The position numbers were made by a program, and so were the translations under genes. Below are positions 3,997 through 63,491 of a DNA stretch of 64,000 nt, piece by piece. A model generated the notes under the pieces. The model had not been told where the DNA came from and ran no database searches. It was given only the letters and a program-made list of their open reading frames with translations. Source of the stretch: Octopus sinensis. Its lineage: Eukaryota. How positions within the stretch are numbered: the first letter of the stretch is position 1; each line of letters opens with the position of its first letter. Where the stretch lies: contig NC_043019.1 of the NCBI RefSeq assembly GCF_006345805.1, positions 28,891,360-28,955,359 on the forward strand, given 5' to 3'.

Positions 3997-4443
3997 AAAT
4001 CCTATTATTATATTTTTATAATTAAATATTATAAGGAATTATATAAAAAAAAAGTTGTTAAAATATTTTGTGTACTGCAGAAGTATAACCAGTTCATTGC
4101 ACATAAATTTTAACAACAAAATCTTATATGGACCCTGGTTGAGAATCACTGACATAGAGGCTCCTACGTTGGCTCTAAAAAGCTGATAATACATCAAATC
4201 AAGTCACTGCTCCTTGTCTTACAGGGTGCTGTGTATCTGTCATAGAACAGAGCTGTTAGAGAATTGGTACAAAATGTATTGTCTCATATACAGCTTAGAT
4301 GTAACATATCGTCATCTGCCATAGCTGAAACATCATAATCATAACCAGTAGCTTAGATCTAACATGCTGTCTTCTGTCATAGCTGAGATGTTGTCATCAT
4401 CAGTCATAACTGAGATATGATGTTATATTATCTTATGTCATTG

Positions 4444-20739: not shown

Positions 20740-23086
20740 AGATGTACTTACTTTTCGTTTGTAGTTTGGGGGTGAAGGGTATGTCGCTATGGCTGGAATT
20801 CTATCAATAGTTGCTATGCTGGGGTCTGAAGAGGAGCGCATGAGTGGAGCTGTTTTAATAGGTAACGTATCAATGTCATCAACGGGACGATTTAGCGCTT
20901 GTTCTGTCTCAGGAGAGGCCACCATGCTAAGTCGGGTTGACATTGGAAATAAGAAATCATCATGCTTAGAATCTGTCAGCTGAAAACACGATAAGAGATG
21001 GAAATTAATATTTTTATTAATTTTTTTCATTGATTAGTTAATCAATTTGTATTTTTGTATATTAATTAATTTATTATCTATTTGTATTTTTAACTATATA
21101 TCTACTATTCGGGTTCTCAATAAGGTTTCCATTTTTTTCTACACGTAAAAAGCAACATCTGAATGTGGCCGATGCCAGCGCCGCCTTGACTGGTGTCCAT
21201 GCCAGTGACACATATAAAGCACCAACCAATCATGGCCATTGCCAGCCTCCTCTGGCCTGTGCCAGAGGCACATAAAAAGCACCCACTACACTCACGGAGT
21301 GGTTGGTGTTCGGAAGGGCATCCAGCTGTAGAAACACTGCCAGGTCAGACTGGTGCCTGGTGCAGCCTCCTGGCTTCCCAGACCTCGGTTGAACTGTCCA
21401 ACTCATGCTAGCATGGAAAATGGATGTTAAACGATGATGATGATGATGAGAGCAGTGGAAGAGATGAATTGTAAAGCATTAGTTAGACAAAAGAGACGTT
21501 AAATGCTGACGATATCAAGAAGAGGAAAAGATTAGAATAATAACACACCGGTTTTTCTGATATCCATATTTGTTGCTTTTGCTGGAAGTCAATCATTTCT
21601 TTCAATTTACGATACCAACTATCACTGCTGTTATGGATAATTGTACCTGTTGGAATACAATTAATAGTTACTTAGCAAAATTAAAGGAGTAATTCAATGA
21701 AATAGATAGGATTACAAGCATCAGCATCACGATCATATAAGTGAATGAGGGAGCAACTTCTGTACATAGTTGCTTGTTCTGTTAGAAATAGCAGCCAAAC
21801 CTTTCTCAAATCAAACCTTGCCATCTTTAAAGAAAAAAACAACCTATTAGATAATATGGAATAGGTGCACACTTAGATAATATGGACCAGGCGCAATACT
21901 TCTCCGGCAAAAAAGCCAACATAGTATATAGTGTAAATGATTTACCATAATATAAAGAACGAGAGTCACTTAATTTGCTTGTAATAGCAACCAAATCTTA
22001 TTTCTTTATTGCCCACAAGGGGCTACACACAGAGAGGACAAACAAGGACAGACAAACGGATTAAGTTGATTATATCGACCCCAGTGCGTAACTGGTACTT
22101 ATTTAATCGACCCTGAAAGGATGAAAGGCAAAGTTGACCTCGGCGGAATTTGAACTCAGAACGTAGTGGCAGACGAAATACCGCTAAGCATTTCATCCAG
22201 CGTGCTAACGTTTCTGCCAGCTTGCCACCTTATCAACCAAATCTTGCTCACATCACACCACACCACCTGTGCCTATGTAGAAGTTCTTTGGAGAATTGTT
22301 GTCGTTCTTGGGTGCTAAAGTAAACCCATTACCCATTTTAATAGCACCATCAAATGACTCACAGGAGCATTTAAAATAGTCCACTGGTCTGAAATAATTT
22401 ATTTCTTTTCTCCAACAAATCTCAGAGGACCAGCCACCCTTGCCACTGACAAAAGATCTCCTAAAATCCTTGCAACAGTGATAATACATTAATTACCTGT
22501 AAATAAATAACTGTAGAACTTCTCTAATTTCATCGATTCTTCGTAGAGCTTTTTCAAGTTCTTGCTTGAGTTTTTGGCCCACCGTGAACGAACATCTTTC
22601 ATAGCAGCCTTCGTTTCTGATGCCACAAAAATTACCAAAGGGTAATATTGTGCAAAGTTGAGCTTTTCAACTGAATCAGGAGTAATGTCCAACAGACAGT
22701 GTTTATTCTGTAGGCGGAGAAAAAACAAAATTCAATATAAGACAATAAAATCATAAACACACAGACATACAGTAGTCACACGCGTAAATTCACAGACATA
22801 TGTTCACATACATGCTGATTCCCACAGACACATTCCCTCCTGTAGCTCTGCACTTTAAAATCCCTTTAGTGAAATGCAGATAAGGGTCAGGGACAGGAAG
22901 AGCATCCAACTATAAAATACTGCCTCAAATAAGCTTCTGTCCAACCTATGCCAGCATAGAAAACAGGCATTAAGCAAGCAAATGAATACATAAATATGTC
23001 TTTAAAAACATACATGCTTTGTTTTAAAGTAGAGTGAAGTTCATAAGATAGAGTGAACACATTCTCGGATGATATATATATATATA

Positions 23087-26100: not shown

Positions 26101-29026
26101 CTTGCCACTTTGTAAGCTTCTTACCATACAGCTTCACCTGCATCAAATTTTCTTCTTATCACACACTACTACTGTCACTCCTTATATGCCAATAGTCTGT
26201 TAATGACTGCTCAAGACCGACCTGCTGGTTGCAGATTATTACAGTGTATTTAAATATGTTGAATGAAGGTAGAGGGGCATAGAAGAGTAATAATGAAAGA
26301 AAAGGAGTGATGGCTAAAAAAAAAAAAAAGTTTCAGAACCACTATATCATCACTCAATCTACTTGAAGTGGCAGCCAAGTCTACCTCAAATCACATCAAA
26401 ATGAAGCAGCTTTAATTTGCTTGCATAACTTGTCAGAATAGCAGCCAAATCTTGCCAAATATAAAGCTTCTTGATCACACAACTACTAAAAATAAGTCAA
26501 ATCTCCCTCAAACCCTATACCCATTGTCTTAACCCTTTAATTGGATAATTAAATATCATGTTTATTTCAATAATGGCGTTAAATATCTGCCAAAAAATAA
26601 AATTGATATTTTCTGCAAGTCAATTATACTTGGCATATCTCAATAAAAAATAATTTTAAACACAACATTCCTCAACAAATGAGAGATTGGTTTATAGAAC
26701 TGTTTTCTGCAGCAGAAGGGTTAAACAGGAAAGACCAGAACACAATGCAAAATACAGTTCTAGATACTCCTAAAATATGAAGATCAAAGATGGAATACCT
26801 TTGGACATAAATCTTCTCTAATGCGTTCAAAGACTGGTTTGGGTTAAAACACTTTGGAGATAATATAAGTTCTATATACAACTAAATCAAAGGTAAAAAA
26901 AAAAAAGCGAAAAGAAGAGAAAATCTAATGATGATTACAGCTGTAGCACATTAGATCATACGTTGTTAGATCAATCTTAGTGCTGACCTGGGGCTAAACA
27001 GCAGCAGCAGCAACAACAAAAACAAAATCGATATTAAACACGCAATCATTGTCCTACCAATCTCTCTTCACGCTGACTAAATAGTATCCATTATTATCGC
27101 CTGATTTGTGCTTCTCATAAAAACATACACCCTCACTCCACTCCCTGTCCCTTGAGACATTTTCTACAGAAATCTCATATTTTCCTTTAATAAGATCATA
27201 AAAATGAGTAACAGAACCGATTACTTTCACTTTCATACGACAAGCTACCTAATTGTATCAAAAAAAAAAGAAAAAGATATTAAGATGCTATCTAATTTGT
27301 ACAAGTTATGATAAAGGTATTTAAGATCTAGATATCAAATAAGTTGCTAATCTAATAACAGAAAATAATGAATAGCTATCGCATTTTCTTTTTTTTAAAA
27401 ATCATATTGAGATAAAATAGTAGAAAAAGCCTTTTTTAAAAATCTAATAAATATAAATTTTCCTGTAATTCAATTTATTGTCATTATATTTTGACAAAGC
27501 TGGAAAAGGTTGTGTGGATAGCCATAGTAAGTTTTCCAAGACTGGTGAAATTGATGTAGTTATCGGTCCTACTGAACAGGTGCAAGTTGACAGCTGCAGA
27601 GAAAGAGATGAGAATTCCAGAGAATTGATATTCTGGAGAATAACAGCAGAGAGCATCAGAGCTAAGTGCAGACCTTCAGGATGGATAAAGTGTGGTTGAC
27701 ATATAGGTGGTAGTAGGGAGCGAAATGATATTAACTGGGAATGTTTGAGAACAGATGGTTGAAAATAACAGGTAAATTTAAATAAAAAGACGTGAAGAAA
27801 TATGAAACTGAAACTGACCATCAGTCAAAATCACACGTTCATAAGCAGGAAACTTGGTGCTGTGATTAACTGCAAGTAGAAATAGTTCAAGTAAATAATT
27901 AAAAAAAGGTTTTCAAAAAGATATCATGTTTGAATATATGTTTTTTTTTTCAGGGATATAAAAGGCAAATATGAAAAATATGAAATGAATATAAAAAAAC
28001 AAAACAAATAGACATATTAGATCCTATTTTATATGAGTTGCATGTATGTATGTATAATAATAATCACCATTTGAGTGTGATCGTTGCCAACGTCACTTCA
28101 CTGGCACGTGTAAAAAGATTCAAGCAAGGTCATTTTGCCAGTACCGCCTGACTGGCGCCCGTGCCAGTGGCACGTAAAAAGCACCTACTACACTCTCGGA
28201 GTGGTTGGCATTAGGAAGGGCATCTAGCTGTAGAAACTCTGCCAGATCAAGATTGGAACCTGGTGCAGCCATCTGGTTTGCCAGCCCTCAGTCAAAATCG
28301 TCCAACCCATGCTAGCATGGAAAGCGGACGTTAAACGATGAATAATAATAATAACAAACACAACAATAATAATTGAGAGGGATTCTTTGGGGTTTTAATA
28401 ATTCACTTCTGGAAACATGGGTGTTTCGTTCAATATCCTTAAACAATCTTTATTCAGGGACCTTTTGAGCAGGATGGGTTACTCGACCAGAAGAAAATTC
28501 TAACTGTGCCCCACCTGCATAGTCATGTGCTGTTTATCTTGATATGAGACCACCATGTTGCGCACATATGGTTGTGATGCATGTGCCTAGTGTGCCCTTA
28601 TCAGACGGGTAGTCATGATGGGTATACTGGGCTTCATATATTTGTACCCCATTGTCACTTTCATGGCATGCACTGCTCTCTCAATAATAATAATAATAAT
28701 AATAAAAAATAAATAAATAAATAAAGGAACTGAAAATTATTCAAGAATGATCCCTGGTTTACCATCCACGCAGGAAGTGCAAAAGATTGTCTTAACTCGT
28801 ATGTCACGTGTACTGAGAAGAACATTGTCAGAATTTTCTTTCCCGTCTCCCCTTTTATTTTCTTTGTCTACTTCTTTTTATTATTTTTTTCTCTGTCTGT
28901 AAATGAACAATCTGGTGTGTTTATTTCAATGACCTACCAATATATATAGTGCGTTTCTCTGCTCTTCGTGTCAGGAAGACACTCAGCAAGAAAAGGAAAC
29001 AAAAGTGAAAGAGGATAATGAAAGTA

Positions 29027-36520: not shown

Positions 36521-38862
36521 TGTATATATATGTATATATGGGTGTATATTATGTGTGTGTGCTTATATATATATATATATATAATTTTAATCCAAAAGGG
36601 AAACAAAAAAACAACAACAACAGGAACAATTACAGTATTATTATTAATAGGCGCTCAGGAGATGGAAGCAGGGAGGTATGACGTTTCGAGACATATATAT
36701 ATATATATATAATTAAAAAGTTTTCTGGCTACAGACTTTCTTAGAATCCAGATAACTCAAAGAGCATGAAATAAAATACAAACTGAAAAGATTGTTGTTA
36801 AATACCACTGTGCACAAAGAAATTAATTTCAACGTATGAACTAAAATGAAGTCATGAGGAATACTGTGAAATCGTATAAGCAAATCTCTTTGCGTACAAA
36901 GAATAACTAACCATCTTAAAGTATGGAAAAAAAAAAAAAAAAGAAAATCGTCTGACAGACTGAACACGAACAGCACAGAACTGGGAATGTCAAGAGAGAC
37001 ATTTATCAATAAAAAGAACCGTATAAAACTAGCTTTTGTAAAACAGATAAAAAAAACAACAATAAAAGAATTACAAATGTTGTAAAAGAAATCAGAAGCT
37101 TTCTAAGTACAACAAAGTGAAGAAACCAGTATGTAACTTTATATTTAAAAAATTTTTCTTGTGCTGATTTCAGTCATTGGATTGCAGCCATGTTGGGAGT
37201 TCCACCTTCATTGGCTTTTACGGATAATATCAACTCACATCCCAGTACTTTGTCTGGTGTTTATTTTACCAAGTAAGGAAAAGTTAGCTGCCAAAAAGAC
37301 ACATTACCATAATGGACTGAAATATAACAAGGTACTTTCATTGATTGTATGTATGTAGGAGCACAAATATATATATATATGTGTGTGTTGAGGCACAATG
37401 GCCCAGTGGTTAGGGCAGTGGACTCGTGGTTGGAGGATCATGGTTTCAATTCCCAGACCGGGCATTATGTGTGTTTATTGAGCAGAAACACCTAAAGCTC
37501 CACGAGGCTCCAGCAGGGGGTGGTGAAGAACCGTGTTTTAGTCTTTCGTGCCAACTTTCTCTCACTCTTTCTTCCTGTTTCTTGAGAAATGCACAGGACC
37601 TTATGTAATCACCCTTCACCATAACCTTGGATCGATCAATACTTTGTGAATAGAGTCCGATAGAGGGAGAACTGTTGAACTTATTATATACTAGCAGTAT
37701 CGCCCGGCGTTGCTCGGGTTGTAAGGGAAATAACTATATAAGCATTTTTAGAGAGTTATAGCCAAAAACTAGCAAAAAAATGCATTAAAAATTGAAAAAA
37801 AATTAAGGTAAATTTTTTTTAAAAATCGTTGACACATCGTAGATATTTTTAGAGAGTTACTTCCCTTATATAAAAGCGAAAAAAATGCATTAAAATGGAA
37901 AAATATGATGGTAAATTTTTTTTAAATCGTAGACTCATCGTAGATGCGCGCTAATACCCAGAAGGGCTCGATATGAATCACGACTATAAGATACCCGCTT
38001 TTGGTTAAACTGCACCGCAAAATGTGGGAGTAGTTACGAATCTAAATCGAAGGGGACAGACACACAACTTCACTCTTATATAAAGATGCTTTTTTTTTCA
38101 GTCATAGAGTTAGATTTATGAAGGTCTTCAGTAGAAAATCCTTCGAATTCTGACTCGCTGCTTGATATAATGAAATTCGTATCCATTTTTTGTCAGAATT
38201 ACAAATTTTGAAAACACAATAGGAACAAATTTCGGAAAAAAAATCTCCCATAATTCATGGAATTAAAATTACACTTCGATTTTTGTACAAAACTGTATTT
38301 GAAGTGTTTACGAAGTATAATACGTGTTTTCACGAATGTACTAAAGAGATTTACTCTGATATTCTCATTTAAATATGAATAGGTAAATTCGGGCGGTTTG
38401 GTAACGAAAGGGTTTATATAAGTGTCGTCTGTTTATACATAAACACTGTTTCATACTTTCAGTTTAGTCTTCCTCAAATCACTCTGTCGCTAATTTACTC
38501 TCTTCCAAGAACATTTTCACTCACTCTTATCTGTTAGCTTCCCATACATTTTACTCATGTATCTATCAGCGTGATAGACAGAAACAAATATTACATCTAG
38601 TTTCACTTTATTCGTTGCACACTGTGTGTGTGCGTTTGCGTGTGCTGTAAACCAGACTAAGAAAAGCATTTGACATACACACCAGAATGTGAGTTTTCTG
38701 TAAATTTTGCTTAATTGGAGTTTAAATTTTAAAAACTGGACCTGGCATGATCCGATGCATTCTACTCTTAAAAATGCTAGGTAAATTGTAATTGAAGAAA
38801 TCCTATATTGTAGATTTCTATAACTTACAAAGAGAGGCAGATAAAATTTGCCTTTTATAATA

Positions 38863-38902
<40 letters not shown>

Positions 38903-39861
38903 AGATAGGGGTTGAAAATTCAACCCACCATGGGATAACATATATCCAATATACTGCTAGAGAGGTACCCAACAAGACTAATACATAAATGTTAAAAATT
39001 GCCATGCAATTAATTCATCTACTGTATTATGTGGGCAAGGGTAAAAATATTACCGTAAATTAATAATACAAAATTAGAAAATGGAGAAACATACTTAAAT
39101 CAATCAAACATCAACCATCAGATAATACCCAATCAATACTTTATTACACCATTACATAACAGCAAAGACATTATACAAAATATATTGTAAATATAATTAG
39201 ACAAGGAAATAGAAATATATTTTATTGGCTCTGTTAGAGATACCTTCGTTTTTGAAGTCCTTATCTGAAGACAATTATATTGTATACACACACACACACA
39301 CATTGAGCTTATGTGGCAGGCTTTGCATGGTTGCTCAACAGGTATCTTGGCTTCCCAAAGTAGTGATATATCAAGGATCTATGACATCCTAGGTTGATAT
39401 TAAAAGAAATAAGACAGGACTCACTGCAAACATTTTCAAAAGCTGTTATCATCAACTACATTCATTCAGGTCAAGGAAAAATCCATATACCCTATCCATT
39501 TTGTTTGGAAACTCAAGGACCAAAGACTGGAATGTCATCCAATAACATGAAGCATTGTTGATAAAGCCTCTCAATACTTCAATGAGTTCAAGAATGGCAA
39601 CATTAAATTGGTCAATGATATCACTTAACTAGAGGTCAGAAAGTTTTATCTTATTATTGTCATAAAAAGAAATTCCTCTTACTCTACTTCCACATAGGCG
39701 CAGGAGTGGCTGTGTGGTAAGTAGCTTGCTAACCAGCCACATGGTTCCGGGTTCAGTCCCACTGCGTGGCATCTTGGGCAAGTGTCTTCTGCTATAGCCT
39801 CGGGCCGACCAAAGCCTTGTGAGTGGATTTGGTAGACAGAAACTGAAAGAAGCCTGTCGTA

Positions 39862-39916
<55 letters not shown>

Positions 39917-42900
39917 ATATGTTTGTGTGTCTGTGTGTCCCCCTACCATTGCTTGACAACTGATGCTGGTGGGCTTACGTCCCCGTCACTTAGCGGTTTG
40001 GCAAAAGAGACTGATAGAATAAGTACTGGGCTTACAAAGAATAAGTCCCGGGGTCGATTTGCTCAACTAAAGGCAGTGCTCCAGCATGGCCGCAGTTAAA
40101 TGACTGAAACAAGTAAAAGAGTAAAGAGTTACTCAACTTCCACATGTCTAAAAATGCCTGTAGGTTCAAATTCATGTTTATCATAACAAATATTTTGAAG
40201 TAGTTACTCCTGAGGATAACAGGTCTGAATCAAGCATTCCATACACAAAGCATTCCAACCAACAGTATTTTTGACATGCAGTATATTTGGCCATGTGATT
40301 TATCTTGACCAATAGAAACCTATCTCAGTATGTGCTGATGTATTGAATGCTGTATGTAAAACATTATCAGTGAATTGAAATTTGCCTTTTGGGTGAGAAA
40401 AACAAATCTAGGAACAATTATTATTGACTTTCAAAGTAAAAGATAATTTTAGGAAACTAGCTCCCCCTCACCCTACCAATTCACTGTTTGTATCCCTTCT
40501 TGTACCCACCTTCTTATATCTTGAGATATTTTGGCATCCCATCACCACCATCTCTATATCTTCTTTCAAGCAACTTCCATCCTTATATAATGTGGAATAG
40601 CCTTATGTCCCCTATACAGCAAGACACTTGTGCTTGTCCTTCTATCATCCTTGAGCTTTGCAATACTTGGCACAGACCCATTGCCCCTCCTCCCCTCTCC
40701 TCTCATTTTGTTAAGGAGACTTTTTCTTTTTTCCTTCTTTTTGTTCTTTTCTTGTCTTGTAACCCCACTAATGCCAGTAGCAAGTAAAAAACACCCAGTA
40801 CACTCAGTAAAGTGGTTGGCATTAGGAAGAGCATCCATCCAGTGGTAGAAACCATGCCAAAACTGATACTGAAGCTTGGTATGGTTTTGTGGTCCACCAG
40901 AACCTGTCAACCCATCCAACATGGAAAATGGATGTTAAATAATGATGATGATGACAACAATGATGATGAGGAGGAGGAGGAATGAATTTCATAGAAAACT
41001 TAATTTTCATTATTGGGTAAAAAAATCCAAACTGTTTTCTTAGCAGGCAAGCAAATGGTTGCAGACTTGTTTAAGTTTGATTAAACTTCGTGAGTAAAGC
41101 ATAGTCTTTTCAAAAAAGAGTTACGAATTGTTTTCCTTCTAAGCATGAATAAATTTTCTGTGAAAAGAATTTCTCATTTCTTAAAATTATCATTTTTTTT
41201 TTCTTTGAAAGCTGCTAACAATTGTTTTATACATACACCATACTAAAATTAGAATTACACAATAGTAGCAGTGCTATAGTAAAAACTTTATCAGTATAAC
41301 ATACTTCACATAAGTGTATGCTTGAAAAACCAGAAACTGCAGGTCTTTGTCTAGGCAAAAAAACCCTTTGTGAAAACATATTGTGTTGAAAAACACTAGC
41401 TAGGCAAAGCAAAATCACTCCGGAAATGACCACAAGAGCAACAAATACAGATTTCATTGTTGCTGTGGCTTCTGAATGTCACAAACTTATGTCACTTACT
41501 CTCTTTTACTTGTTTCAGTCATTTGACTATGGCCATGCAGGAGCACTGCCTTTAGTCGAGCAAATCGACCCCAGGACTTATTCTTTGGAAGCCTAGTACT
41601 TATTCTATCAGTCTCTTTTGCTGAACCGCTAAGTTACGGGGACGTAAACACACCAGCATCGGCAGTCAAGCGATGTTGAGGGGACAAACACAGACGCATA
41701 AACATATACACACGCACATACATATATATATACGACGGGCTTCTTTCAGTTTCCGTCTACCAAATCCACTCACAAGGCTTTGGTCGGCCCGAGGCTATAG
41801 TAGAAGACACTTGCCCAAGGTGCCATGCAGTGGGACTGAACCCGGAACCATGTGGTTCATAAGCAAGCTACTTACCGCACAGCCACTCCTACGCCTTCCA
41901 AAACAAGATTGAATCAGTTAATCTGAAGTTTTTTAAAATATTATATAAACTATACACAGGTTTTCAAAGGCACTGCATAAGGAGAATAAAATTCAAACAA
42001 TGAACTAGAAGCAGCTTTATAGTAAAAACTTTATGAATATAACTTACTTAATGTATATGCATCATTGGAAAGCAAGGAGCTGCAGTTTTCCGTCTGGGAA
42101 AAATCCCTTTTGTGTTTAAAAGCACAATATACTTCAGAACTAAGCAAAATGAAATTGCCCTTGAAGCAATTATATGGTACATCACCACCTATTTTGAATT
42201 ACATAAATTCAAACCAACAGTCCATTTGAGTTATTCCTCTTAGCTCATGTTTCGCAACTATACAATTTACCACTGGCCAAGACTGTCAGTAAATGTCTTT
42301 ACATTTGCTTTGCAGAATCTAACGTTCACTGATTGAATAGGTTTGAAAAGACCATGTATGGGTGTGTTTCAGGCTTATTAGACCTCTTCAGCAAAGTATG
42401 GTCTTTAAAAGTAAATCTCATACTTTGCTGAAGAGGTCTAATAAGACTGAAACACACCCATACGTGAAGTATGAAAATTAGATTTTCTCTGAAAGTAATT
42501 TATATTTCTTGAAATTATCTCTCCTTTATTTTGTGAGTTGCTGACAACTACAGCTAGGTTTTTGTTTCTCCAACTAAGAGGTAAATTCCAATTCACTGAG
42601 AAGTATTTTATGCTTGCCATTCAGTGCATCTCCACCTACCTGAATTAGGTTGGGTTTGAAGAGTACATCAGTCGTAAGTACAAGGACACACAAGTCTTAA
42701 TTTGAAAAGAATGTGTGTATTAACTAGAAGAGTATGAGCACGTGTGTGTATGTTAACCAGAAGAGCACGTGTGTTAACTGTGTGTGTGTGTGTTTGTATG
42801 TGTTTTAAGTAGAGGAATGTATATATATATATATGTGTGTGTGTGTGTTAACTGGAAAAGTATGTGCATGTGTGTGTGTGTTAACTAAGAGAGAGTATAA

Positions 42901-43787
42901 GTTTCATACATTACATATGTACAAAATTAGTTTTAACTAGAGACCACTTCAATAAAAATAAGAAACTATATTAAAAGAAAAAAGAAAAAAGATAGAATAT
43001 TGATTTTTGAGATAATAAAATATTTCAAATTGATAGAAAGTAAAAAAAAAAAAAAAAATGCTTTCTCATGTGCAGACAGTAGCTTTTTGCTTGGTTTTGG
43101 TATAGACTAAGAATTATATTTAACAGAGACTTATCAAAGAGCAGATCAAAGAGGAAAAGTAGTAATTAATCCTTCTCGTTACAAACCCACCTAACAACAT
43201 TACTGTACTAAATTGTTCTTATTTAAAAGTAAATCTCAATAAAAATCTCATTGCAACACGAGTGATATGAATGGTAACATGAAATTCCAGATGGTCAATG
43301 CCAATGTAATATAACACATACATACACACACACACAACCCATACACACACATGTGTGTGTGTGTGTCCCCGTCCATTTATGAATTAGAAGCAGCACTAGT
43401 GTTGTAAACATTATCAACTGCACATATACACAATATATGTGTTCTGCTTCTTCGCAGGCAATGCTGTGGTTCCGCATGGTGGGGATGACTCCACCAAAAT
43501 GCCAGGTGCTGAAACACTTGAAAGTCACGGACAGGTGAGACAATTCTCTCCGAGCCACAGAAAATGGTGAAATATCAGTGTCCATCACTCCTGAATGGTA
43601 ATAGGAGGTGAGTTGTCATGCTTGTCCAGCGCTTTGGGGGAAGTCATCTCTACTGTGCTGAACCACAGATGGAAACTAAAAGAAGCCCATTGCATATATA
43701 TATATATATATAAACACGTGTAGAATGAAATAAAACGATTCCTGTTCAATCTGCGTTCAGCTCCATTTCTTCAATTCACCAATAATG

Positions 43788-43833
<46 letters not shown>

Positions 43834-44917
43834 GTGTGTGTGTGTGTGGTGTGTGTGTGTGTGTGTGTGTGTATGTTAACCAGAAGAGCACGTGTGTTAA
43901 CTGTGTGTGTGTGTGTGTTTGTATGTGTTTTAAGTAGAGGAATGTATATATATATATATGTGTGTGTGTGTGTTAACTGGAAAAGTATGTGCATGTGTGT
44001 GTGTGTGTGTAAACTAAGAGAGAGTATAAGTTTCATACATTACATATGTACAAAATTAGTTTTAACTAGAGACCACTTCAATAAAAATAAGAAACTATAT
44101 TAAAAGAAAAAAGAAAAAAGATAGGAATATTGATTTTTGAGATAATAAAATATTTCAAATTGATAGAAAGTAAAAAAAAAAAAAAAAAATGCTTTCTCAT
44201 GTGCAGACAGTAGCTTTTTGCTTGGTTTTGGTATAGACTAAGAATTATATTTAACAGAGACTTATCAAAGAGCAGATCAAAGAGGAAAAGTAGTAATTAA
44301 TCCTTCTCGTTACAAACCCACCTAACAACATTACTGTACTAAATTGTTCTTATTTAAAAGTAAATCTCAATAAAAATCTCATTGCAACACGAGTGATATG
44401 AATGGTAACATGAAATTCCAGATGGTCAATGCCAATGTAATATAACACATACATACACACACACATACCCATACACACACATGTGTGTGTGTGTGTCCCC
44501 GTCCATTTATGAATTAGAAGCAGCACTAGTGTTGTAAACATTATCAACTGCACATATACACAATATATGTGTTCTGCTTCTTCGCAGGCAATGCTGTGGT
44601 TCCGCATGGTGGGGATGACTCCACCAAAATGCCAGGTGCTGAAACACTTGAAAGTCACGGACAGGTGAGACAATTCTCTCCGAGCCACAGAAAATGGTGA
44701 AATATCAGTGTCCATCACTCCTGAATGGTAATAGGAGGTGAGTTGTCATGCTTGTCCAGCGCTTGGGGGAAGTCATCTCTACTGTGCTGAACCACAGATG
44801 GAAACTAAAAGAAGCCCATTGCATATATATATATATATATAAACACGTGTAGAATGAAATAAAACGATTCCTGTTCAATCTGCGTTCAGCTCCATTTCTT
44901 CAATTCACCAATAATGT

Positions 44918-44996
<79 letters not shown>

Positions 44997-45580
44997 TTTT
45001 CTGTCTGTGTTTGTCCCCCACTACCATTTGAGAATCAGTGCTAGTGTGTTTATGTCCCCGTAACTTAGCGGTTTGGGAAAAGAGATCGATAGGATAGAAT
45101 AAGTATATCTATATATATCTATATATCAAAATCATTGTATTGACCAGACAATTAGATGTTGTAATACATCACTGGTCACAATGTGCTTCCTTGCATTGCT
45201 GTACCTTTTGAACGATGCCATCTGACTGGTTAGGCAGGCAGGCCAACATTCTCTGCTGAATGGAATGCCAGTCTGTCACGGGGTTACCTATCTACAGCTG
45301 AGTGGACTGGAGCAATGTGAAATGAGATGTTTCGATCAAGGACACAATGTATCACTGGTCAGGAAATCAAAACTATGACCTTGCGATCATGAGTGCAACA
45401 CACTAACCACTAGGCCATGTGCCTCCATACACGCACATATATATAAACACACACACACACACATATATATATACATATATGTACATATATATGCAGACAC
45501 ACATATGCATACATACATACATAAATACATACAGATATACATATACACACACATACATAAATACATACAGATATACATAT

Positions 45581-45625
<45 letters not shown>

Positions 45626-48600
45626 CATATAGGTAAACTCACCCATGTGCTTCGTTGATGTTGATCAGTTAGCTGATCGGCTTAAGCGGGCAGGGTCGTT
45701 GTTTATTATAATACATTCAGGCCTGCTGATGAATACGTAAGTATGAAATCACTGTGATACAGGTCTATATTTTTTAAATGTCTTACTTTGAAAAATTGCG
45801 TTCGGTGGGATTAGTAATATTTTTGGTAGAAATGACTAATTGTCCCTCTTAGCGTGTGGCATGTATGTATAATGCCTTCTGGCATGTAGTATAATGCCCT
45901 CTATATATAAATTAATATGTTCAATAAGAAATAATTATTTTCAAAATTTTTTCTCTTATGAGGTTTTCACGCTATCTACCTGACAATTTCTTGTTAAGTT
46001 TTCCTTATTAAGTAGTTGTCCTTAATTGCTAATTTTTATTCCGAAAAAACTTTTCCTCTCCCGAAATGCAATTCGTAAAAGTTTGCCATTTATCCGGATG
46101 TAATATATGTAAACTCACCCATGTGCTTCGTTGATGTTGATCAGTTAGCTGATCGGCTTAGCGGGGCAGGGTCGTTGTTATTTATAATACATTCAGGCCT
46201 GCTATGAATACGTAAGTATGAAATCACTGTGATACAGGTCTATATTTTTTAAATGTCTTACTTTGAAAAATTGCGTTCGGTGGGATTAGTAATTTTTGGT
46301 AGAAATGACTAATTGTCCCTCTTAGCGTGTGGCATGTATGTATAATGCCTTCTGGCATGTATGTATAATGCCCTCTATATATAAATTAATATATATACAT
46401 ATATATATAATATATATATATATATTCACATAAGAATTAAGATATAAACTCAAATTAGACAATCAACTTTTTATACATACTCATACAGTTATAAATTCGA
46501 CTTACAATGTATGTGTGTGTATGTATATATATATATGAAATAAGCCTGTCATTTGTACGTATGTCTTATCTAGTGTTGGTTTGTTTGTATTCCCTATCTT
46601 AGCTGGTTGGCAAGAGAGGCCGATAGAATAAGGACCAGGCTTGAAAAATAATTACTGGTGGTGATTTGTTTGACTGAACCCTTCAAGACGGTGATCTAGC
46701 ATGGCCACAGTCCAGTGACTGAAACAAAGTAGCAGTGTAAAAGTGTCATCACTGAATTTTGATTCGTTGTAAAATGTAACTTGAAAAACAATCTTCATAA
46801 AATAATGTAAACAAACAATAGAGAAATTTATGTAGAAAATAAGGAAAAACAGATAATTATAGGAGCTTTCAATCTAACGCTTTTAATAGCAACATACCTG
46901 AGACAGCCTCTGGTTCTATGAGACAAAAACCTTTCATTTTAATGTGTTTACATTCAAATTATAACATTCCATCTTAATTTTATTTAAGACTCCTTTTGTT
47001 GTATTCAAAATACCAACAAAATAGTGACAAAGCATTATTTTACTGAATTTCTTTAGATTATTGGTTATTTTTACAATTAAATTGAAACATATGGAGAACC
47101 GTATTTCATTAAAATTACAGTTACAAAAGGGGGTTAAAATTTACAAGCTACCAAGATCTGTCAGGTTAACAATAGAAAATTTGTTGTTTTAAAATATAAA
47201 CATCAACCCCTTTAAGCATTCAGATTACTCTGTCAAATGTAACACTTCTTTATTCACTTTGTTTTGAATTAATCATGCAGTATTACTTCATAGCTTCAAG
47301 ATGTGATTGTTTATTTTCAGGGTGACATTGTAAGGGAGGTGTGAGAAGTTGTATTTGGCTGGTTTGAACATAAAACAGGTAGAATGTTTGGGCTGGATAT
47401 GGCAGTTTAAATGCTAAACTGGTTGAAATAGTAATATTGAAATAGAAATAGTAAATATAGAAAAAAAGCCAAACAGAAAATAACGAGAAAACATTTTCAA
47501 AAAATGTCATTGCTCATCTGAAATATCATACATATATAGCATTCTGTGTTTTTTTTTTCCTATTTTGCTTGTTTCTTTTTTTTTTTCTTTGAATGAAAGC
47601 AACGAGAACAACAACACTAAATGATGCAGATTCGCATAAAACATGAACATTAACTACACAGTTAATTGGCACACACAACACACAAACGAACTGAAAGTCT
47701 CATGTTAGACACATTCAGGTGCAAAACAATTTCAAAAGAAACTAGACAGTTTAAATAAATACAGTGTCAGACACTTACCAGCTTCATTGGCTACAAGTAT
47801 AGAAATAATTGTAACAATAGAACATAACAAGATGAAGAAGATATAAACAAGTTTTAGGTCAAAGAGAAAATAAGCACACGTTCTTTAGAACTTTCAAAAC
47901 ATTCAAATGATCACAAAATTACACTTTTTCTTAAAAAAAGTTGTTTTTTCCAAAAAAAACGAAAAACATAGGTTTACATTTTATCAGAGATTATGTTGTA
48001 CTCAGGTAAATGTGATAATGTATTTCATTTTTTGTTTGATTAATGGTGTTACCAACTCACTGAAATATTTTGTAAGTGGCTGAGTATTTCATGGGCACTT
48101 GTCTATACCACTTAAAATAATCTTCAGATAAAATCATCTTCATATTTGTTGTGTGGACGCCCCCAAACAATGAAGTAGGATAGCCCAATATGTAGATATA
48201 GAGGGAGAAGTCTAGACGTCGGGAGTTGAGTAGAGGTCATCCGAACATGCGATATAACAGTGGTGATGAGGATTTCGTGGCACACACAGCCACTGTGCAG
48301 TATTGCAATATAACAATATTGTTGTTTAACAAGGACATACATATATAGTTTACTGTTCCATTATATATTGGATCAACAAAAAAAAAAAAAGGTACTCCAC
48401 CTAGTGAGAAATAAATATCATTTAATCTAGTAGTAGTAGGAATCCATTGGTCTTGAGAGGCCATGGATCTGCACCTGACGAAATTGTAACATTTAATCTA
48501 GACAGTATTTAAATAAGAGCTACTAATAGTTTCATGCCATGGAAGCATGATAATTTGGCAGGTTTATATAACATAACTTGTGTCTCCAAGAAATCCTTCA

Positions 48601-51600
48601 GGTTCAGTGCACATGAGTAGCTCTTGCTGAAAACTAGAAACCTGAAAGATTGCTTGGAGACACAAGGTGTGTTTTAGAAATCTGCCAAATTAGCATGTTT
48701 ACATGGCTTGAAACTGTTAATAGCTCTCATTTAAATACTGTGTTTATGTGTGTGTGTGTGTCTATATACACACACAGATTCATATTCAATTATAATTCAT
48801 TCTTGATGTTAAAACGGTTCCCTACTGCCATTGTTATCTCCTGTACTTATGTAAATATTAAATTAATATCAATAAATGATAAACATTGTTTTTTTCATCA
48901 CATAATTATTTCTAATTAACTTTATTTAAATGCTCATTACATCAAATATGCTATCACATTTATTTGAATACAATGCAATCTCCAATAAAATATGAACCCC
49001 AATTTTCCTAGTTAAAAATCAATAATATATATATATATATTCTTTTGAATAATGTGACCCCAAGGAACAACTGTAATTACTTATATTATCAAAAAAAAAA
49101 GTTCTTCCATAGTAAAATACACTTACAACTTGTAGAGTCCCAATCTCCTTTCACATTCTTGTGAATTTAACCAACCAACATATCCATACCTTGGTGCCAC
49201 TTATATACACCTTCCTGTAACCTGAGTGTACTCCCTATCATATCTTCATCGTCTCTCTCACTCTCCTACTGATGTAGCCATGTGTCTGTCCCTCTTCTTT
49301 TACTCTGACCTCACATCTGGCACAAAGCCACATTCCTCACTGCTATTCCCCAACTCATTTGAGGGTTTTTGCCTTGTAAATTATTTTGTGACCTCTATGC
49401 CGTGCTTGAGAAGACCCGGCAAGCCAAGTGAGACCATGACCTCGTGGCCTATGCCAGGGGCGTAACCAGCCCACTTATGCATACCCTTTTCTTTTTTGGA
49501 CACTAAACTGCTTGCGAAGACCTGTTGAGGCAAGTGAAATTGAAATCAAATTCGATGACTGGCATCCGTGCTAGCAGGGTGCAAGGAGCACCATACAAGT
49601 GTGATCGTTGACAGAGCGACTAACCGTCTTCCGTGCCAGTGGGACATAAAAGGCACCTTTCAAGTGTGACCGTTACCAGCATTGCCTTACTGGCACCTGT
49701 GCCAGTGGCATGTGTAAAAAGATTCAAGTGAGGTCATTGCCAGTACTGCCTGACTGGCCTCCGTGCAAGTGGAACATAAAAGCACCCACTACACTCTCGG
49801 AGTGGTTGGTGTTAGGAAAGGCATCCGCTGAAGAAACTCTGCCAGATCAAGATTGGAGCCTGGTGCAGCCATCTGGTTCACTAGCCTTCAGTCAAATCAT
49901 CCAACCCATGCTAGCACGGAAAGCGGACGTTAAACGATGATGATAATGATGACTGCTGCTGGTGCCACATAAAAAACCCCACCCTGCACACTCTGTAAAG
50001 TGATTGCCATTAGGAAGGACATCTAACCATAAAAAACACATCAAAGCAGACAAGTTGAGCTTGGTGCAGTCTTCCAACTTGTCAGCTCCTGTCTAACTGT
50101 CCAGACTATGCCAGCATTAAATGACGATGATGATGCTGATGGTTCTTGCTTATATTCAATAACTTTTACCCTTTTGATACCAAGCTGCTTGAAACCATCG
50201 GTGGTTCAAAGATACAAACTTCCTTTTTAAAGTGATCGAAATAAAACCTCCCTTCAAATTTTCATTTCATCATTTTAATAATGGCAAAGTAATTTTATTA
50301 AATTCTTCATTATTTTCAAAATCAATTGAAGTAAAGACAGTGTATTTTAAGAGATTTATGTAAACAAAAGAGTTAAAACCACTGAGAGCTGGCTGCAACA
50401 GTGACAGTTTTCATTGCTGCACTCTATGAAGGCTGTACAATAGTTGTTAAATGCCTCACAGTTACAACCTTCAGTTCCTTCATTTCACAAGTCTGTTTTT
50501 GTTGTTGTTGCATCTAGTACTTTTTTACCTCTAGAATTTTGTGTTAAATTTCAAAATTATTCTGTATGAATAAATACATTAGGATTATTTTCACTATGGC
50601 TTTTCATAAGGTGGGCATCTCTGAATTATTTCTGTCTGATACAACTAGTCTATGTCATTGTACATTTACTTAAAAGATTCTCTTGTAACTACTTTGTCAA
50701 GTATAATGAAAATAATGATTCACTTATGAGGTTGCAATAATACAGAAACATGTCCAGAATTATCTCCCATTCAGCTAAGAAGCTGCATTTTGTCCTAACT
50801 GCATACTTCTTTCTTGTTATATTTACCTGCTCTATAAGAGCAGATAGAGACAATATTATGTTAATGGTCATCCACACATTTTCTGTCAAGAAATTTCACT
50901 CACAAGGTTTTGGCTGATGTGAGGCTATGGAAGAAGAGAGACTTGCACCTAGGTGTCACACATTGGGAGGTCAAACCTGTAGCAACATAGCTGTGATGCA
51001 AATTTGTACACCACAAAGCTATACTTTCATGTACATCTTAACCCATTTGATACATATTTCTTTACTACCCACAAGGAGCTAAACACAGAGAGGACAAACA
51101 AGGAGAGACAGACAGATTAAGTCGATTACATCAACCCCAGTGTGTAACTGGTACTTAATTTATCGACCCCGAAAGGATAAAAGGCAAAGTGGACCTCGGC
51201 GGAATTTGAACTCAGAACGTAACGGTAGACAAAATACGGCTATGCATTTCACCCAGCGTGCTAACGTTTCTGCCAGCTCGCCGCATTTAACCCATTTGAT
51301 ACAAGTCCACCTGAGACCACCTCTAGTTCTTTGACACAAACTTACTGTTTTAAAGTGAACTAAGTTATAATCTTCCATTAAAACTTTATCTTAATTTGTT
51401 TCCGACACCAACTTGGTAATAAAGTTGTTTTACTAAGTTCTTCATTATCTTTAAAATTAATTAATTGAAACAAAGTTGTAGTACATGTCTAGAGAAATAT
51501 AGTAACAAAAAACTTAAAATGAAGTCTGTTTACCAATTTGGCGTCACTCATTGTAAAAATATCCCTGAGAAAATCACAGATGTTGGAATTTTACATGTAA

Positions 51601-52692: not shown

Positions 52693-53674
52693 AAGGAGGG
52701 ATATAAGCTAGTTTTCCATTATTTCTATTTTATTTTATTCCTTTACTGTTTTTTTTTCCTTTTACTGTGTGAGTATTCCAGTATGGCCAGTCTACTGTCC
52801 ATTGTGGAATACCCAGCAATTTCAAAGTACCAGTTGAAACTCTATTGACCCATTCATTCTCTTGGTGCTTGTAGTAAACTAGTGCATATTTTATCAATTC
52901 TGAAAGGACAAAAGGCTAACATAACCTGTTCTGGGTTTGAATTCTGAACACAAAAGGATGGAATCAAAAAAAAAAACCACACCAGCTGTACAAAATATTT
53001 TGCCTGACACTCTACTGATTCAACCACACATTTGTTAACAACAAATTCATTACCGACTAATAAATAAATTAAAAAATGATAATAATTTAAAACCAAACAG
53101 AATAAAAAAGAAAAACAGACAGTACTTCAAAGTGAACTTACAGAATATAACATCATCCCAGTGGTTTTGACCGAGTGTTTTAGCACGACGAGCAGATTTT
53201 CTTCGAAATAAACTTGTGCTTTTCTGTTTACTCAAAGCCAGTTCTTTATCACTGAGACTTTGCTGCTGGTTAAGGGCCATTTTTTCTGCTCTGTAATAAA
53301 AAAAAAATATATAGATTATCATCATCATCGTTTAACGTCAGTTTTCCATGCTAGCATGGGTTGGACGGTTCAACTGGGGCCTGGGAAGCCAGAAGTCTGC
53401 GCCAGGCCCAGTCTGATCTGGCAGTGTTTCTACAGCTGGATGCCCTTCCTAACGCCAACCACTCCGAGAGTGTAGTGGGTGCTTTTTACGTGCCACCTGC
53501 ACAGGTGCCAGACGAGGCTGGCAAACGGCCACGATCGGATGGTACTTTTTACGTGCCACTGGCACGGGGCCAGACGATATATATATATATACATATTACT
53601 GAAGCATAATGTAAGAATTGTAAAAGTTATCAAAAATACATTTTATATAGTGCAAACACTATCTGATATACAAC

Positions 53675-61412: not shown

Positions 61413-63491
61413 TGTGTGTACATACATATGAAATTTACTCCATGGTCATTAGTTCAATAGAATACATTTTGCCAGATTAATGATTATGGATTAAATGTTT
61501 ATCCACATCAGATTTATCTTTGAGTTATTTATTCTCAGTGGGTGACCAGCCATAACTTCTTTGAACTTGCCAACCTCTGGAATATATGCATGTGTGCATG
61601 TGTGTGTGCATGTATGTATACATGTGCATGTGTTTGTGTCTCCTTGTTTTGACATTGTGTGATAGTTGTAAATGATCGTCACTGTTATACAAGCAGTGTC
61701 ATTCATTTGCATTATGCTGCGAGAACATGGTCTGGCCATTGGAAAAATATTACCTTGCTTGGAAACAAGCGAAGGTAGGCAACAGGAAAGTCATCCAGCC
61801 ACAGAAAATCTGCCTCAAAATCTCTATCGGACTCATGCAAGCATGGAAAATTGGACGTTAAAATGATAAAGATGTACATATGTCTATTTATATATATACA
61901 AATATATATAAACATTAAATATATACACACATATACATATCTATACATATATATCCATACATATATATATATACATATATATATATATACATACATATAT
62001 ATATTTATAAATATATATTTATACAAATACATACATACACACACATATATATATATATATATATATGCATATATGCACACACACACACACATGTGCACAC
62101 CAGTACTTAAAGAGATAAGAACTTCCGTATCAAAATGATATTCAGACACACTGTTTACACAGATAGAGAGAAATGGTGTATACAATTTATACAAAAGACT
62201 CAACGTTTTCAATGCAAGTGACAGTAGGGTTGTTGCAATATCGCTAGCAGATCAAAGACATAGGATGTAACAATAATAATAACAACAATACTAATAAGAT
62301 TTATATATATTTCCCCCACGAAGTAATTAATTAGCAATCTATATAACACACTGGCTAATGTAACATTTGAAGAAAAAAGAAAACAAAAAAAAAACCAAAA
62401 AAAAAAACCAAAAGAATTTCACTGTTTTAGCTTTTTCCAATACCATCAGGCAGAAGAGGAAGAATCATCTGGCTATTTTATATGAAATAAGTGAATAAAA
62501 AGATCAAAAGAACAGAATTAAAAAAAATTGTCTGATCGAACTGGTTGTAATGTTTTGATTACATTGTATTGATTGGTTTATTTTGCCATAAGTATGAGGA
62601 GATGGAGGGAAGGGAGTAAAGAGAGTGTAAATGTATCATCTTTAAATGGGGTGAAAAAATTCCTGAAAACCTTAAACAGCAACTAAAACATTTTGGAAAA
62701 ACATACGTTAAACATTACAAAACAAAAAAAAAGAAAAAACTATGAATAAACAATCTTAAATCATCCCCAAGAAAACTCCTTTAAATAATATCAACAAAAA
62801 ATTTCATCAAAAAGAACAAAAAAGTTTCCAGAAAACAACTATCTTTTTTTTTAAAAAAAAATTCCTTAAAAGATATCAAACCCATAAAAAACAACCAGAA
62901 AACCTTGATAATAAAAATTACAAAAGCAAACAATAAAAAAAAAACATTAAAAAATCTCAACTAAAATAACCCATTAAAACAAAAAATATAAAAAACAACC
63001 AGACAAAAAGCCATGTAAACATACCCCCCCACCACCACCATTACTACTAACCAAAGGAAATGAGATCAAACATTTATGAGAAATCAAACCAATGGAATGT
63101 CCTTAAAATATGAGACACAGAACTTTGACATAAACCTATTTGCTTTGTTATCTTCTTCATGGGCCCCGAAGACATGGCTAGAGAAAAATACTACAAAGTG
63201 GGACATGGATAAGTAGCCTGGGTTCTGTAGCATAGGGGAAATACAGAAATGAATTTACACACACAGAAAAGTACCCAGCCTTTCATTTGCAAGCGTCATT
63301 TCAGTTATTTCGACCACTTGTAACTGCTGAACGAAGGAGGTGCATCAGTCGATTGTTGGCTGCATTGTCCTCACCACATTAGTTGATTGTAAGATTGCAT
63401 TGAGTGAATATCTCTAGTCTTTTCTGCAAGATGATGTACTCAGTAATGGAAAGAATGGAGATGGTGGAAGCATATGTGAGAATGCTTTTTA

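What the first reader, a model, noticed from the sequence alone, without database searches (positions are those of the whole stretch)
39244..47790. Three phase-1 microexons (12, 18, 21 nt) in the SH3-GUK hook of ZO-1
Seen: the 25.3 kb intron 27870-53141 is phase 1. It contains three short segments with good acceptors and GT donors, each a multiple of 3 and stop-free: 47779-47790, 46898-46915 and 39244-39264. With all included the protein reads [35 protein letters not shown]; with none, [18 protein letters not shown]. Known: the MAGUK SH3-GUK hook (U5 in ZO-1) governs localisation and binding, and DLG paralogues carry alternatively spliced inserts there. Inference: up to 8 isoforms that add acidic residues beside the basic [10 protein letters not shown] patch, possibly tissue- or neuron-regulated. 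I saw no UGC motif (SRRM4-type) next to the two acceptors I checked (12- and 18-nt exons).
Basis: partly seen in the sequence, partly recalled or inferred. Interest (0 to 1): 0.75.

Follow-up and report, generated by a model that had tools for sequence, protein, structure and literature searches.

The report
Conserved 12-nt microexon in octopus ZO-1
Of the three proposed tiny exons in the big intron of the octopus ZO-1 gene, only the 12-base one is backed by evidence: a matching acidic mini-exon, missing from every gene model seen here, sits in the same intron of four distant snails and limpets.

Summary
The sequence facts are correct. The gene is a ZO-type MAGUK on the minus strand. It matches Octopus vulgaris CAI9739572.1 at 100% in most exons, with a few differences. 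Intron 53141-27870 is phase 1, and the three segments read as stated. As a set they are not above chance: 503 frame-compatible AG..GT segments lie in the intron, and the three rank 7th, 11th and about 56th by splice-site score. The annotated protein uses the direct junction ([18 protein letters not shown]), which is colinear with almost all other animal ZO proteins. The "8 isoforms" count is wrong: the 18-nt segment starts with AA, which makes TAA after the hook exon's T unless the 12-nt exon precedes it.

The 12-nt segment (47790-47779, SNEA) is nevertheless very probably a real microexon. In the same phase-1 intron of Lottia, Elysia, Bulinus and Candidula, the top-scoring candidate is also a 12-18-nt acidic exon: SDEE, DNEDN, DDEDE, DEDDGE. 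These share the core RAYGAAG, and all five end in G|GTRAG. None is in the annotated proteins. I found no support for the 18- and 21-nt segments, and no transcript data could be reached. Verdict: partly supported, with one conserved unannotated microexon in the ZO-1 hook and two probable chance pseudo-exons.

The parts
53142..53290 (-). Hook (U5) exon of the ZO-1-like gene. It encodes [10 protein letters not shown]...[22 protein letters not shown] and ends in phase 1 with a T.
   Evidence: 100% match to residues 572-620 of O. vulgaris CAI9739572.1, with the junction reconstructed. The same exon end and phase occur in Lottia, Elysia, Bulinus, Candidula, amphioxus and a crinoid.
47779..47790 (-). 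12-nt microexon CCAATGAAGCTG, phase 1 to phase 1. It inserts S-N-E-A and changes the next residue from F to V. This is the supported part of the finding.
   Evidence: Sequence. Donor CTG|GTAAGT scores 6.51 bits. The upstream 50-100 nt are pyrimidine-rich, at the 97th-98th percentile of all AG sites in the intron. It is the only segment of its quality in 64 kb on both strands and the top candidate in the intron on the combined score. Counterparts: Lottia CTGATGAAGAGG, Elysia ATAATGAAGACAATG, Bulinus ATGATGAAGACGAAG, Candidula ATGAAGATGATGGTGAAG.
47791..47880 (-). Pyrimidine-rich upstream region and acceptor (ttgtag) of the 12-nt microexon.
   Evidence: Y fraction is 0.72 over 50 nt and 0.67 over 100 nt. 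Long T-rich tracts precede the Lottia and Elysia counterparts.
46898..46915 (-). 18-nt candidate AACCAGAGGCTGTCTCAG (E-P-E-A-V-S). Unsupported. It stays in frame only when it follows the 12-nt exon; after the hook exon it gives T+AA = TAA.
   Evidence: Donor CAG|GTATGT scores 5.88 bits, but the acceptor context is poor (Y25 0.45, 31st percentile). It ranks 11th of 503. No counterpart in the four gastropod introns.
39244..39264 (-). 21-nt candidate ATAAGGACTTCAAAAACGAAG (D-K-D-F-K-N-E). Unsupported and most likely a chance pseudo-exon. A (TG)n microsatellite lies about 20 nt upstream of its acceptor.
   Evidence: Donor AAG|GTATCT scores 0.83 bits and Y25 is 0.55. It ranks about 56th of 503, and controls give 36-65 equally good segments. 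No counterpart in gastropods.
27819..27869 (-). Conserved 51-nt exon, phase 1 to phase 1, encoding (F/V)[16 protein letters not shown]. This is the strand that follows U5 and leads into the GUK domain.
   Evidence: The exon has the same size and phase in amphioxus, and the same 17-residue exon occurs in the gastropods and the crinoid. It aligns to human ZO-1 structures 3LH5, 3TSW and 3SHW.

Best explanation
The window carries part of the ZO-1-type MAGUK gene of Octopus vulgaris or a very close relative, on the minus strand. The 25.3-kb phase-1 intron between the hook (U5) exon and the conserved 51-nt exon holds one genuine microexon, the 12-nt segment 47790-47779.

This exon is an old molluscan feature. 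An in-frame 12-18-nt exon with a pyrimidine tract, an AG acceptor and a G|GTRAG donor lies in the same intron of a limpet and three heterobranch snails. In each case it encodes a short acidic or polar peptide (S/D-N/D-E-...).

When spliced in, it adds four residues (SNEA, with the next residue F changed to V). The insertion sits between the conserved HWDDVIF motif and basic [10 protein letters not shown] patch of U5 and the TKFPAYERV strand that leads into the GUK domain.

The most likely mode (inferred, not shown) is cassette-type alternative splicing. The skipped form is the one annotated, and it is colinear with nearly all other animal ZO proteins. The included form would add negative charge and length to the SH3-GUK hinge and so could tune hook-dependent binding.

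The 18-nt and 21-nt segments are most likely chance AG..GT pseudo-exons of a long AT-rich intron.
For: Gene and junction:
- tblastn and PDB matches to ZO-1.
- Most exon cores match O. vulgaris CAI9739572.1 at 100%; that protein reads [18 protein letters not shown].

The 12-nt exon in octopus:
- Near-perfect donor and an extended pyrimidine-rich upstream region.
- Unique in 128 kb of sequence scanned.
- Ranks 1st of the intron's candidates on donor plus pyrimidine score.

Conservation:
- In each orthologous intron, scored on splice signals only, the best candidate is an acidic microexon. These are Lottia 3689-3700 SDEE, Elysia 4091-4105 DNEDN, Bulinus 16370-16384 DDEDE and Candidula 62810-62827 DEDDGE.
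- All are multiples of 3, and all five end in G|GTRAG. Octopus, Lottia, Elysia and Bulinus share the core RAYGAAG.
- Such peptides make up 1-4% of candidates in the longer introns. The product of the five fractions is about 5e-8; the peptide class was defined post hoc.
- The rest of these introns does not align. Even between cephalopods only the exon plus about 20 nt is conserved.

Against the other two segments:
- Ordinary ranks and poor acceptor contexts.
- The TAA dependence of the 18-nt segment, seen directly in the sequence.
- No gastropod counterparts.
Against: - No transcript evidence of inclusion was obtainable. All three protein searches returned no cephalopod or mollusc transcript that spans the junction.
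- All five annotated mollusc proteins whose loci I examined skip the exon. So do RefSeq isoforms of Littorina (X2) and Dreissena (X3, X4).
- By a plain donor plus acceptor PWM the 12-nt segment ranks only 7th in the intron.
- The heptamer AATGAAG occurs 6 times per strand in the intron, so sequence resemblance alone is weak. Two look-alikes with poor splice sites exist.
- The peptide class and the combined score were defined after seeing the data.
- The 18- and 21-nt segments could be cephalopod-specific exons. Gastropods cannot test that, and no second cephalopod intron was available.
Confidence: 0.72

Rival explanations
1. All three segments are chance pseudo-exons. The gene uses only the direct 53142-to-27869 junction, and the gastropod look-alikes are coincidence.
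For: As a set the three are no better than chance. The only available octopus protein and all mollusc annotations use the direct junction, which is colinear with 49 of 54 ZO homologues. A/G-rich words such as AATGAAG are common in these introns.
Against: The best splice-signal candidate in each of five independent introns has the same kind of sequence, the same phase, a 3n length and an acidic peptide. The Lottia intron is only 847 nt, and its candidate outscores the next by about 10 units.
Confidence: 0.1
2. One reading: three independent alternative microexons (12, 18, 21 nt) generate a combinatorial set of hook isoforms.
For: All three are in frame with AG/GT. The 18-nt segment has a good donor and lies only 875 nt downstream of the supported 12-nt exon. 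On the donor plus pyrimidine score it is within the top 8.
Against: The 18-nt segment creates TAA without the 12-nt exon. The 18- and 21-nt acceptors are weak, and the 21-nt donor is weak too. They rank 11th and about 56th of 503, with equal numbers in controls. Gastropods show only one conserved microexon per intron.
Confidence: 0.04
3. The 12-nt exon is constitutive in molluscs, and the annotated skipped form is an annotation error. Gene predictors and short-read aligners often miss exons this small.
For: It is missed in all five annotations I examined, from different pipelines. Its splice signals are very strong in Lottia, Elysia and Bulinus.
Against: The skipped form has exactly the spacing (4 residues) seen in nearly all bilaterian ZO proteins. 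RefSeq models of Littorina and Dreissena, which normally draw on transcript data, also skip it. The octopus acceptor is only average.
Confidence: 0.12
4. The conserved element is not coding. It would be a recursive-splicing or other intronic processing site: a juxtaposed 3' and 5' splice site used to remove a long intron stepwise.
For: A strong acceptor lies close to a strong donor inside a 25-kb intron.
Against: The Lottia intron is only 847 nt and still has the element. Lengths are always multiples of 3. The encoded peptide is conserved in character (acidic) while the nucleotides vary.
Confidence: 0.02

Closest known systems
Alternative hook isoforms of amphioxus ZO-1 (Branchiostoma floridae XP_035670915.1 / XP_035670919.1 versus XP_002603185.1)
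   Same: The same junction varies. The phase-1 intron after ...HWDDIVF and the following 51-nt exon are conserved with octopus, and the isoforms differ by a 5-residue insert exactly there.
   Different: The insert (GRKSN, basic) comes from an alternative 5' donor 15 nt downstream in the same exon, not from a separate microexon. No acidic microexon stands out in the amphioxus intron.
Alternatively spliced HOOK inserts of DLG1/SAP97 (I2, I3, I5 and others)
   Same: These are short alternative inserts between the SH3 and GUK domains of a MAGUK that change hook-dependent binding and localisation. An example is protein 4.1 binding by I3 (PMC2133382; PMC9307800).
   Different: This is a different MAGUK subfamily with larger inserts and no sequence relationship. 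It is a functional analogy only, and homology was not tested.
Animal microexons (3-27 nt cassette exons; the neural SRRM4/eMIC-dependent programme)
   Same: Size (12 nt), 3n length, strong donor, long pyrimidine-rich upstream region, deep conservation of the exon in otherwise unalignable introns, and a location in a surface loop next to a protein-interaction domain.
   Different: No UGC motif lies in the usual 10-40 nt window upstream in octopus, Lottia, Bulinus or Candidula; only Elysia has one (read). Tissue specificity is unknown. No paper in the library links microexons with ZO-1/TJP1 or lists this one.
Known ZO-1 splice variants (vertebrate alpha domain; Drosophila Pyd isoforms)
   Same: They show that ZO-1 function is tuned by alternative exons (PMC6748370, PMC6605796).
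   Different: By my own recollection, not checked in those papers, those exons lie C-terminal to the GUK domain or elsewhere, not in U5. U5 itself is known as indispensable for occludin binding and junctional localisation in vertebrates (PMC3879131).

Membership tests
ZO (zonula occludens) subfamily of MAGUKs | PDZ3-SH3-U5-GUK core with ZO-type sequence | tested here: met
   The spliced window protein matches human ZO-1 structures 3LH5, 3TSW and 3SHW at E about 1e-65 over SH3 and GUK. Most exon cores are identical to O. vulgaris 'junction ZO-1-like' CAI9739572.1, with a few residue differences. Homologues carry PDZ, SH3_2 and Guanylate_kin Pfam hits.
Cassette microexon | Very short exon (27 nt or less), a multiple of 3, flanked by canonical AG and GT in the sense strand of an intron | tested here: met
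   for all three segments. This feature alone is met by 503 segments in the intron.
Cassette microexon | Splice signals clearly better than the intronic background | tested here: inconclusive
   Met for the 12-nt segment. Not met for the 18-nt acceptor or for the 21-nt segment.
Cassette microexon | Conservation of the exon, its frame and its splice sites in orthologous introns of distant species | tested here: met
   Met for the 12-nt segment only: Lottia, Elysia, Bulinus and Candidula. Not met for the 18- and 21-nt segments in gastropods. Other cephalopods were not available.
Cassette microexon | Transcripts showing inclusion (and, for an alternative exon, also skipping) | not testable with these tools
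   No RNA-seq is on hand. Protein searches found no mollusc transcript across the junction. Only skipped-form models are on record.
SRRM4/eMIC-dependent neural microexon | UGC-containing enhancer close upstream of the 3' splice site, and neural-specific inclusion | tested here: not met
   The nearest UGC lies about 86 nt upstream in octopus. Only Elysia has one within about 15 nt (sequences). Neural specificity cannot be tested here.
DLG-type HOOK inserts | Homologous insert position and sequence in the DLG hook (for example the 4.1-binding I3) | not tested
   Only the general location (SH3-GUK linker) is shared. DLG structures align only over the GUK domain.

The most novel reading that the evidence does not exclude
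An acidic 12-18-nt microexon in the U5/hook of ZO-1 has been kept in cephalopods and gastropods, lineages I take to have been separate for roughly half a billion years (own knowledge, not tested here). It is absent from every mollusc gene model examined here. In octopus it may also be the entry point of a small ordered cassette: the 18-nt segment is readable only after it. This would give a lineage-specific switch on the SH3-GUK hinge of the main junctional scaffold in animals that lack occludin-based tight junctions.
Probability: 0.12. Interest if true: 0.6.

Novelty: new member of a known kind. Interest (0 to 1): 0.45.

Why it matters
The SH3-U5-GUK unit is the regulatory core of ZO-1. In vertebrates, deleting U5 abolishes occludin binding and junctional localisation (PMC3879131).

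A tiny exon kept at the end of U5 across the molluscs sampled points to a regulated change in this hinge that current annotations miss. It gives a concrete target for RT-PCR or isoform-specific experiments in octopus, Aplysia-type snails and limpets.

It is also a worked example of how a microexon that cannot be told from chance in one genome becomes convincing once orthologous introns are compared. It corrects the over-reading of the other two segments.

Tried and rejected
1. Transcript or isoform evidence from the protein collections.
- One search (hook plus microexons) found only a genomic ORF of the hook exon from a distant relative, probably a cephalopod (P0001/L002).
- One search (355 aa) and one search (five-mollusc profile with the microexons inserted) returned arthropod and vertebrate fragments only, all shorter than about 620 aa. 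Neither contained a mollusc junction.
P0024 was used instead and brought in the full-length ZO proteins.

2. SNEA resembling SNAA/SNPA of a retrocopy (P0024) and of the brachiopod ZO1. I considered this as evidence that the microexon is the ancestral segment. I rejected it because the skipped form FNHS is the colinear counterpart, and molluscs vary at these four residues (AGLS, SGLA, SGVN, SHLQ).

3. The dragonfly 10-residue spacing (P0112) as a possible microexon. It lies inside a single exon.

4. RefSeq isoform sets of tick, horseshoe crab, crinoid and zebra mussel. None varies at this junction.

5. Priapulus has no intron here, and the crinoid intron is only about 170 nt. No evidence for the microexon was found in the few non-molluscs checked.

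6. Repeat origin. The flanks of the 12- and 18-nt segments are unique in the window.

7. Literature. Nothing links microexons with TJP1/ZO-1 or lists octopus microexons gene by gene.

8. Two further octopus look-alikes, 51448-51434 ATAATGAAGAACTTA and 37214-37206 CCAATGAAG. Both have poor donors or acceptors and were set aside.
Full report
**What is there**

The minus strand of the window carries part of a ZO-type MAGUK gene. I then set the splice junctions by hand.

The spliced product matches the human ZO-1 SH3-GUK structures 3LH5, 3TSW and 3SHW at E about 1e-65. The U5/hook stretch between the two domains is left unaligned.

An exhaustive HMMER search seeded with a relative (P0024) returned P0044. 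This is CAI9739572.1, 'junction ZO-1-like isoform X4' of Octopus vulgaris, 1446 aa. Most of its exons match the window at 100%, and a few residues differ elsewhere. The window is therefore O. vulgaris or a very close relative.

Exons in the region:

| Coordinates | Notes |
|---|---|
| 60898-60796 | |
| 59181-59130 | |
| 56450-56280 | SH3 |
| 53290-53142 | hook exon, ends in phase 1 with T |
| 27869-27819 | 51 nt, phase 1 to phase 1 |
| 24572-24477 | |
| 23290-23208 | |
| 22707-22497 | |
| 21646-21549 | further exons lie downstream |

**Check of the observation**

Three qualifications apply.

- The set is not above chance. The 25,272-nt intron contains 503 AG..GT segments of 6-30 nt that are multiples of 3 and open in phase 1. 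With a generic donor plus acceptor weight matrix, the 12-, 18- and 21-nt segments rank 7th, 11th and about 56th. Other phases and the antisense strand hold similar numbers of equally good segments: 3-8, 9-13 and 36-65 respectively.
- The acceptors of the 18- and 21-nt segments are not good. Pyrimidine content at -25..-4 is 0.45 and 0.55, against 0.55-0.91 for twelve real exons of this gene.
- The 18-nt segment begins with AA. After the hook exon's final T this reads TAA, so it is usable only when the 12-nt segment, which ends in G, precedes it. At most six of the eight combinations are productive.

**What the annotated protein and the homologues say**

P0044 uses the direct junction, [18 protein letters not shown]. 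Among 54 ZO homologues with recognisable flanks, 49 have exactly four residues between the W-D-D-V-V/I-F motif and (S/T)KFPAYERV. The skipped form is therefore the colinear, ancestral architecture.

Exceptions were followed up.

- Amphioxus isoforms differ by GRKSN at exactly this point. The locus shows that this comes from two alternative donors 15 nt apart in the hook exon. The 51-nt exon and the phase-1 intron are conserved with octopus.
- A dragonfly with a longer spacing has it inside one exon.
- RefSeq isoform sets of a tick, a horseshoe crab, a crinoid and Dreissena do not vary here.

**The 12-nt segment**

Taken alone, this segment is unusual.

- Its donor is CTG|GTAAGT.
- The 50-100 nt upstream are pyrimidine-rich, at the 97th-98th percentile of all AG sites in the intron.
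- It is the only frame-compatible short segment in the whole window, on either strand, that combines a strong donor with such an upstream region.

The decisive evidence came from orthologous loci fetched through annotated proteins: Lottia gigantea (L005), Elysia marginata (L006), Bulinus truncatus (L007) and Candidula unifasciata (L008). All have the same phase-1 intron, ranging from 847 nt to 10.8 kb, followed by the 17-residue exon.

I scored every frame-compatible AG..GT segment on splice signals only. The best candidate in each intron is a short acidic exon:

| Species | Sequence with splice sites | Peptide |
|---|---|---|
| Octopus | ttgtag\|CCAATGAAGCTG\|gtaagt | SNEA |
| Lottia | ataaag\|CTGATGAAGAGG\|gtaaga | SDEE |
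| Elysia | ttaaag\|ATAATGAAGACAATG\|gtaagt | DNEDN |
| Bulinus | aataag\|ATGATGAAGACGAAG\|gtaaga | DDEDE |
| Candidula | ggaag\|ATGAAGATGATGGTGAAG\|gtgagt | DEDDGE |

Lengths are 12, 12, 15, 15 and 18 nt. All five end in G before GTRAG. Octopus and Lottia share 8 of 12 bases.

Peptides of this kind make up 0.9-4% of candidates in the four longer introns. The product of the five fractions is about 5e-8. That class was defined after the fact, but the margin is very large.

The remaining intron sequence does not align. Even a contig that is probably from another cephalopod (L002) matches the window only over the hook exon plus about 20 nt.

I conclude that 47790-47779 is a conserved molluscan microexon that none of the examined annotations contains.

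**The 18- and 21-nt segments**

The gastropod introns hold nothing resembling either segment. Their splice signals are ordinary, and the 21-nt segment lies about 20 nt downstream of a (TG)n microsatellite.

Cephalopod-specific exons cannot be excluded, because no second cephalopod intron could be reached. I put the 18-nt segment at roughly 10-15% and the 21-nt segment at about 5% of being real.

**How it probably works**

- Shown: position, frame, splice signals and conservation.
- Inferred: that the exon is a cassette included in some transcripts. Skipped-form models exist in RefSeq for Littorina and Dreissena and in all five annotations I examined.

Inclusion adds four residues, one of them acidic in octopus and three to five in gastropods. 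The insertion sits between the basic [10 protein letters not shown] / HWDDVIF part of U5 and the TKFPAYERV strand that leads into the GUK domain.

In vertebrate ZO-1, U5 is indispensable for occludin binding and junctional localisation. Ordering of U5 together with rotation of GUK against SH3 has been proposed to regulate binding (PMC3879131). In DLG1/SAP97, alternative hook inserts change partner binding and localisation (PMC2133382, PMC9307800).

By analogy, the insert would lengthen and acidify the hinge and so modulate hook-dependent interactions. This is inference only.

I found no UGC enhancer in the usual position, so there is no positive sign of SRRM4/eMIC-type neural control.

**Limits**

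No transcript data could be reached. The three protein searches returned no mollusc transcript across the junction. In practice that tool listed only proteins shorter than about 620 aa.

In the few non-molluscs checked, the intron is absent in a priapulid, too short in a crinoid and shows no comparable exon in amphioxus. On present evidence the exon is a molluscan feature, sampled here in one octopus and four gastropods.

**Verdict**

The finding is partly right. One of the three proposed microexons is real with good probability, and it is an unannotated, deeply conserved feature of molluscan ZO-1. The other two, and the eight-isoform scheme, are not supported.

Noticed in passing
window 42779-43848 and 43904-44977: A tandem duplication of about 1.13 kb inside the big intron. 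The copies are 99-100% identical, so it is either a very recent duplication or an assembly artefact. It produces duplicated pseudo-exon candidates.
   Followed up: partly
L001 10001-10681 (ENA ERZ26052287, contig of 489,759 bp): An intronless 226-aa copy of the SH3-end/hook/GUK part of a ZO mRNA (P0024, reading ...[20 protein letters not shown]). It lies among reverse-transcriptase genes and looks like a processed retrocopy in an unidentified invertebrate genome assembled from a metagenome. It is 62% identical to brachiopod ZO1.
   Followed up: partly
window 51434-51448 and 37206-37214 (minus strand): Two further AG..GT segments carry the same AATGAAG core: ATAATGAAGAACTTA, which is 10/10 identical at its start to the Elysia microexon, and CCAATGAAG, identical to the first 9 nt of the 12-nt exon. 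Both have poor splice signals (donor -6.1 bits, and acceptor Y50 0.40).
   Followed up: partly
L003 21880-21912 and 22759/22774 (Branchiostoma floridae ZO-1): Amphioxus RefSeq isoforms carry a second small insert (GDGLLILQHR) at the SH3/hook exon junction. This is in addition to the +15-nt alternative donor at the hook/51-nt-exon junction.
   Followed up: partly
window 19882-19953, 20752-20979 and 10249-10488 (minus strand exons): A few amino-acid differences from O. vulgaris CAI9739572.1, for example ...HTKEPTYS versus HTKEHTYS, while most exons are identical. The window therefore comes from another individual or assembly, or from a sister species.
   Followed up: no
window 39273-39303: A (TG)n microsatellite about 20 nt upstream of the acceptor of the 21-nt candidate. 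TA and TG microsatellites are very frequent throughout the window.
   Followed up: no
L009 (Priapulus caudatus) and L010 (Antedon mediterranea): Intron history at this junction: the priapulid gene has no intron in the whole SH3-hook-GUK stretch, while the crinoid keeps the phase-1 intron (about 170 nt) and the 17-residue exon.
   Followed up: partly
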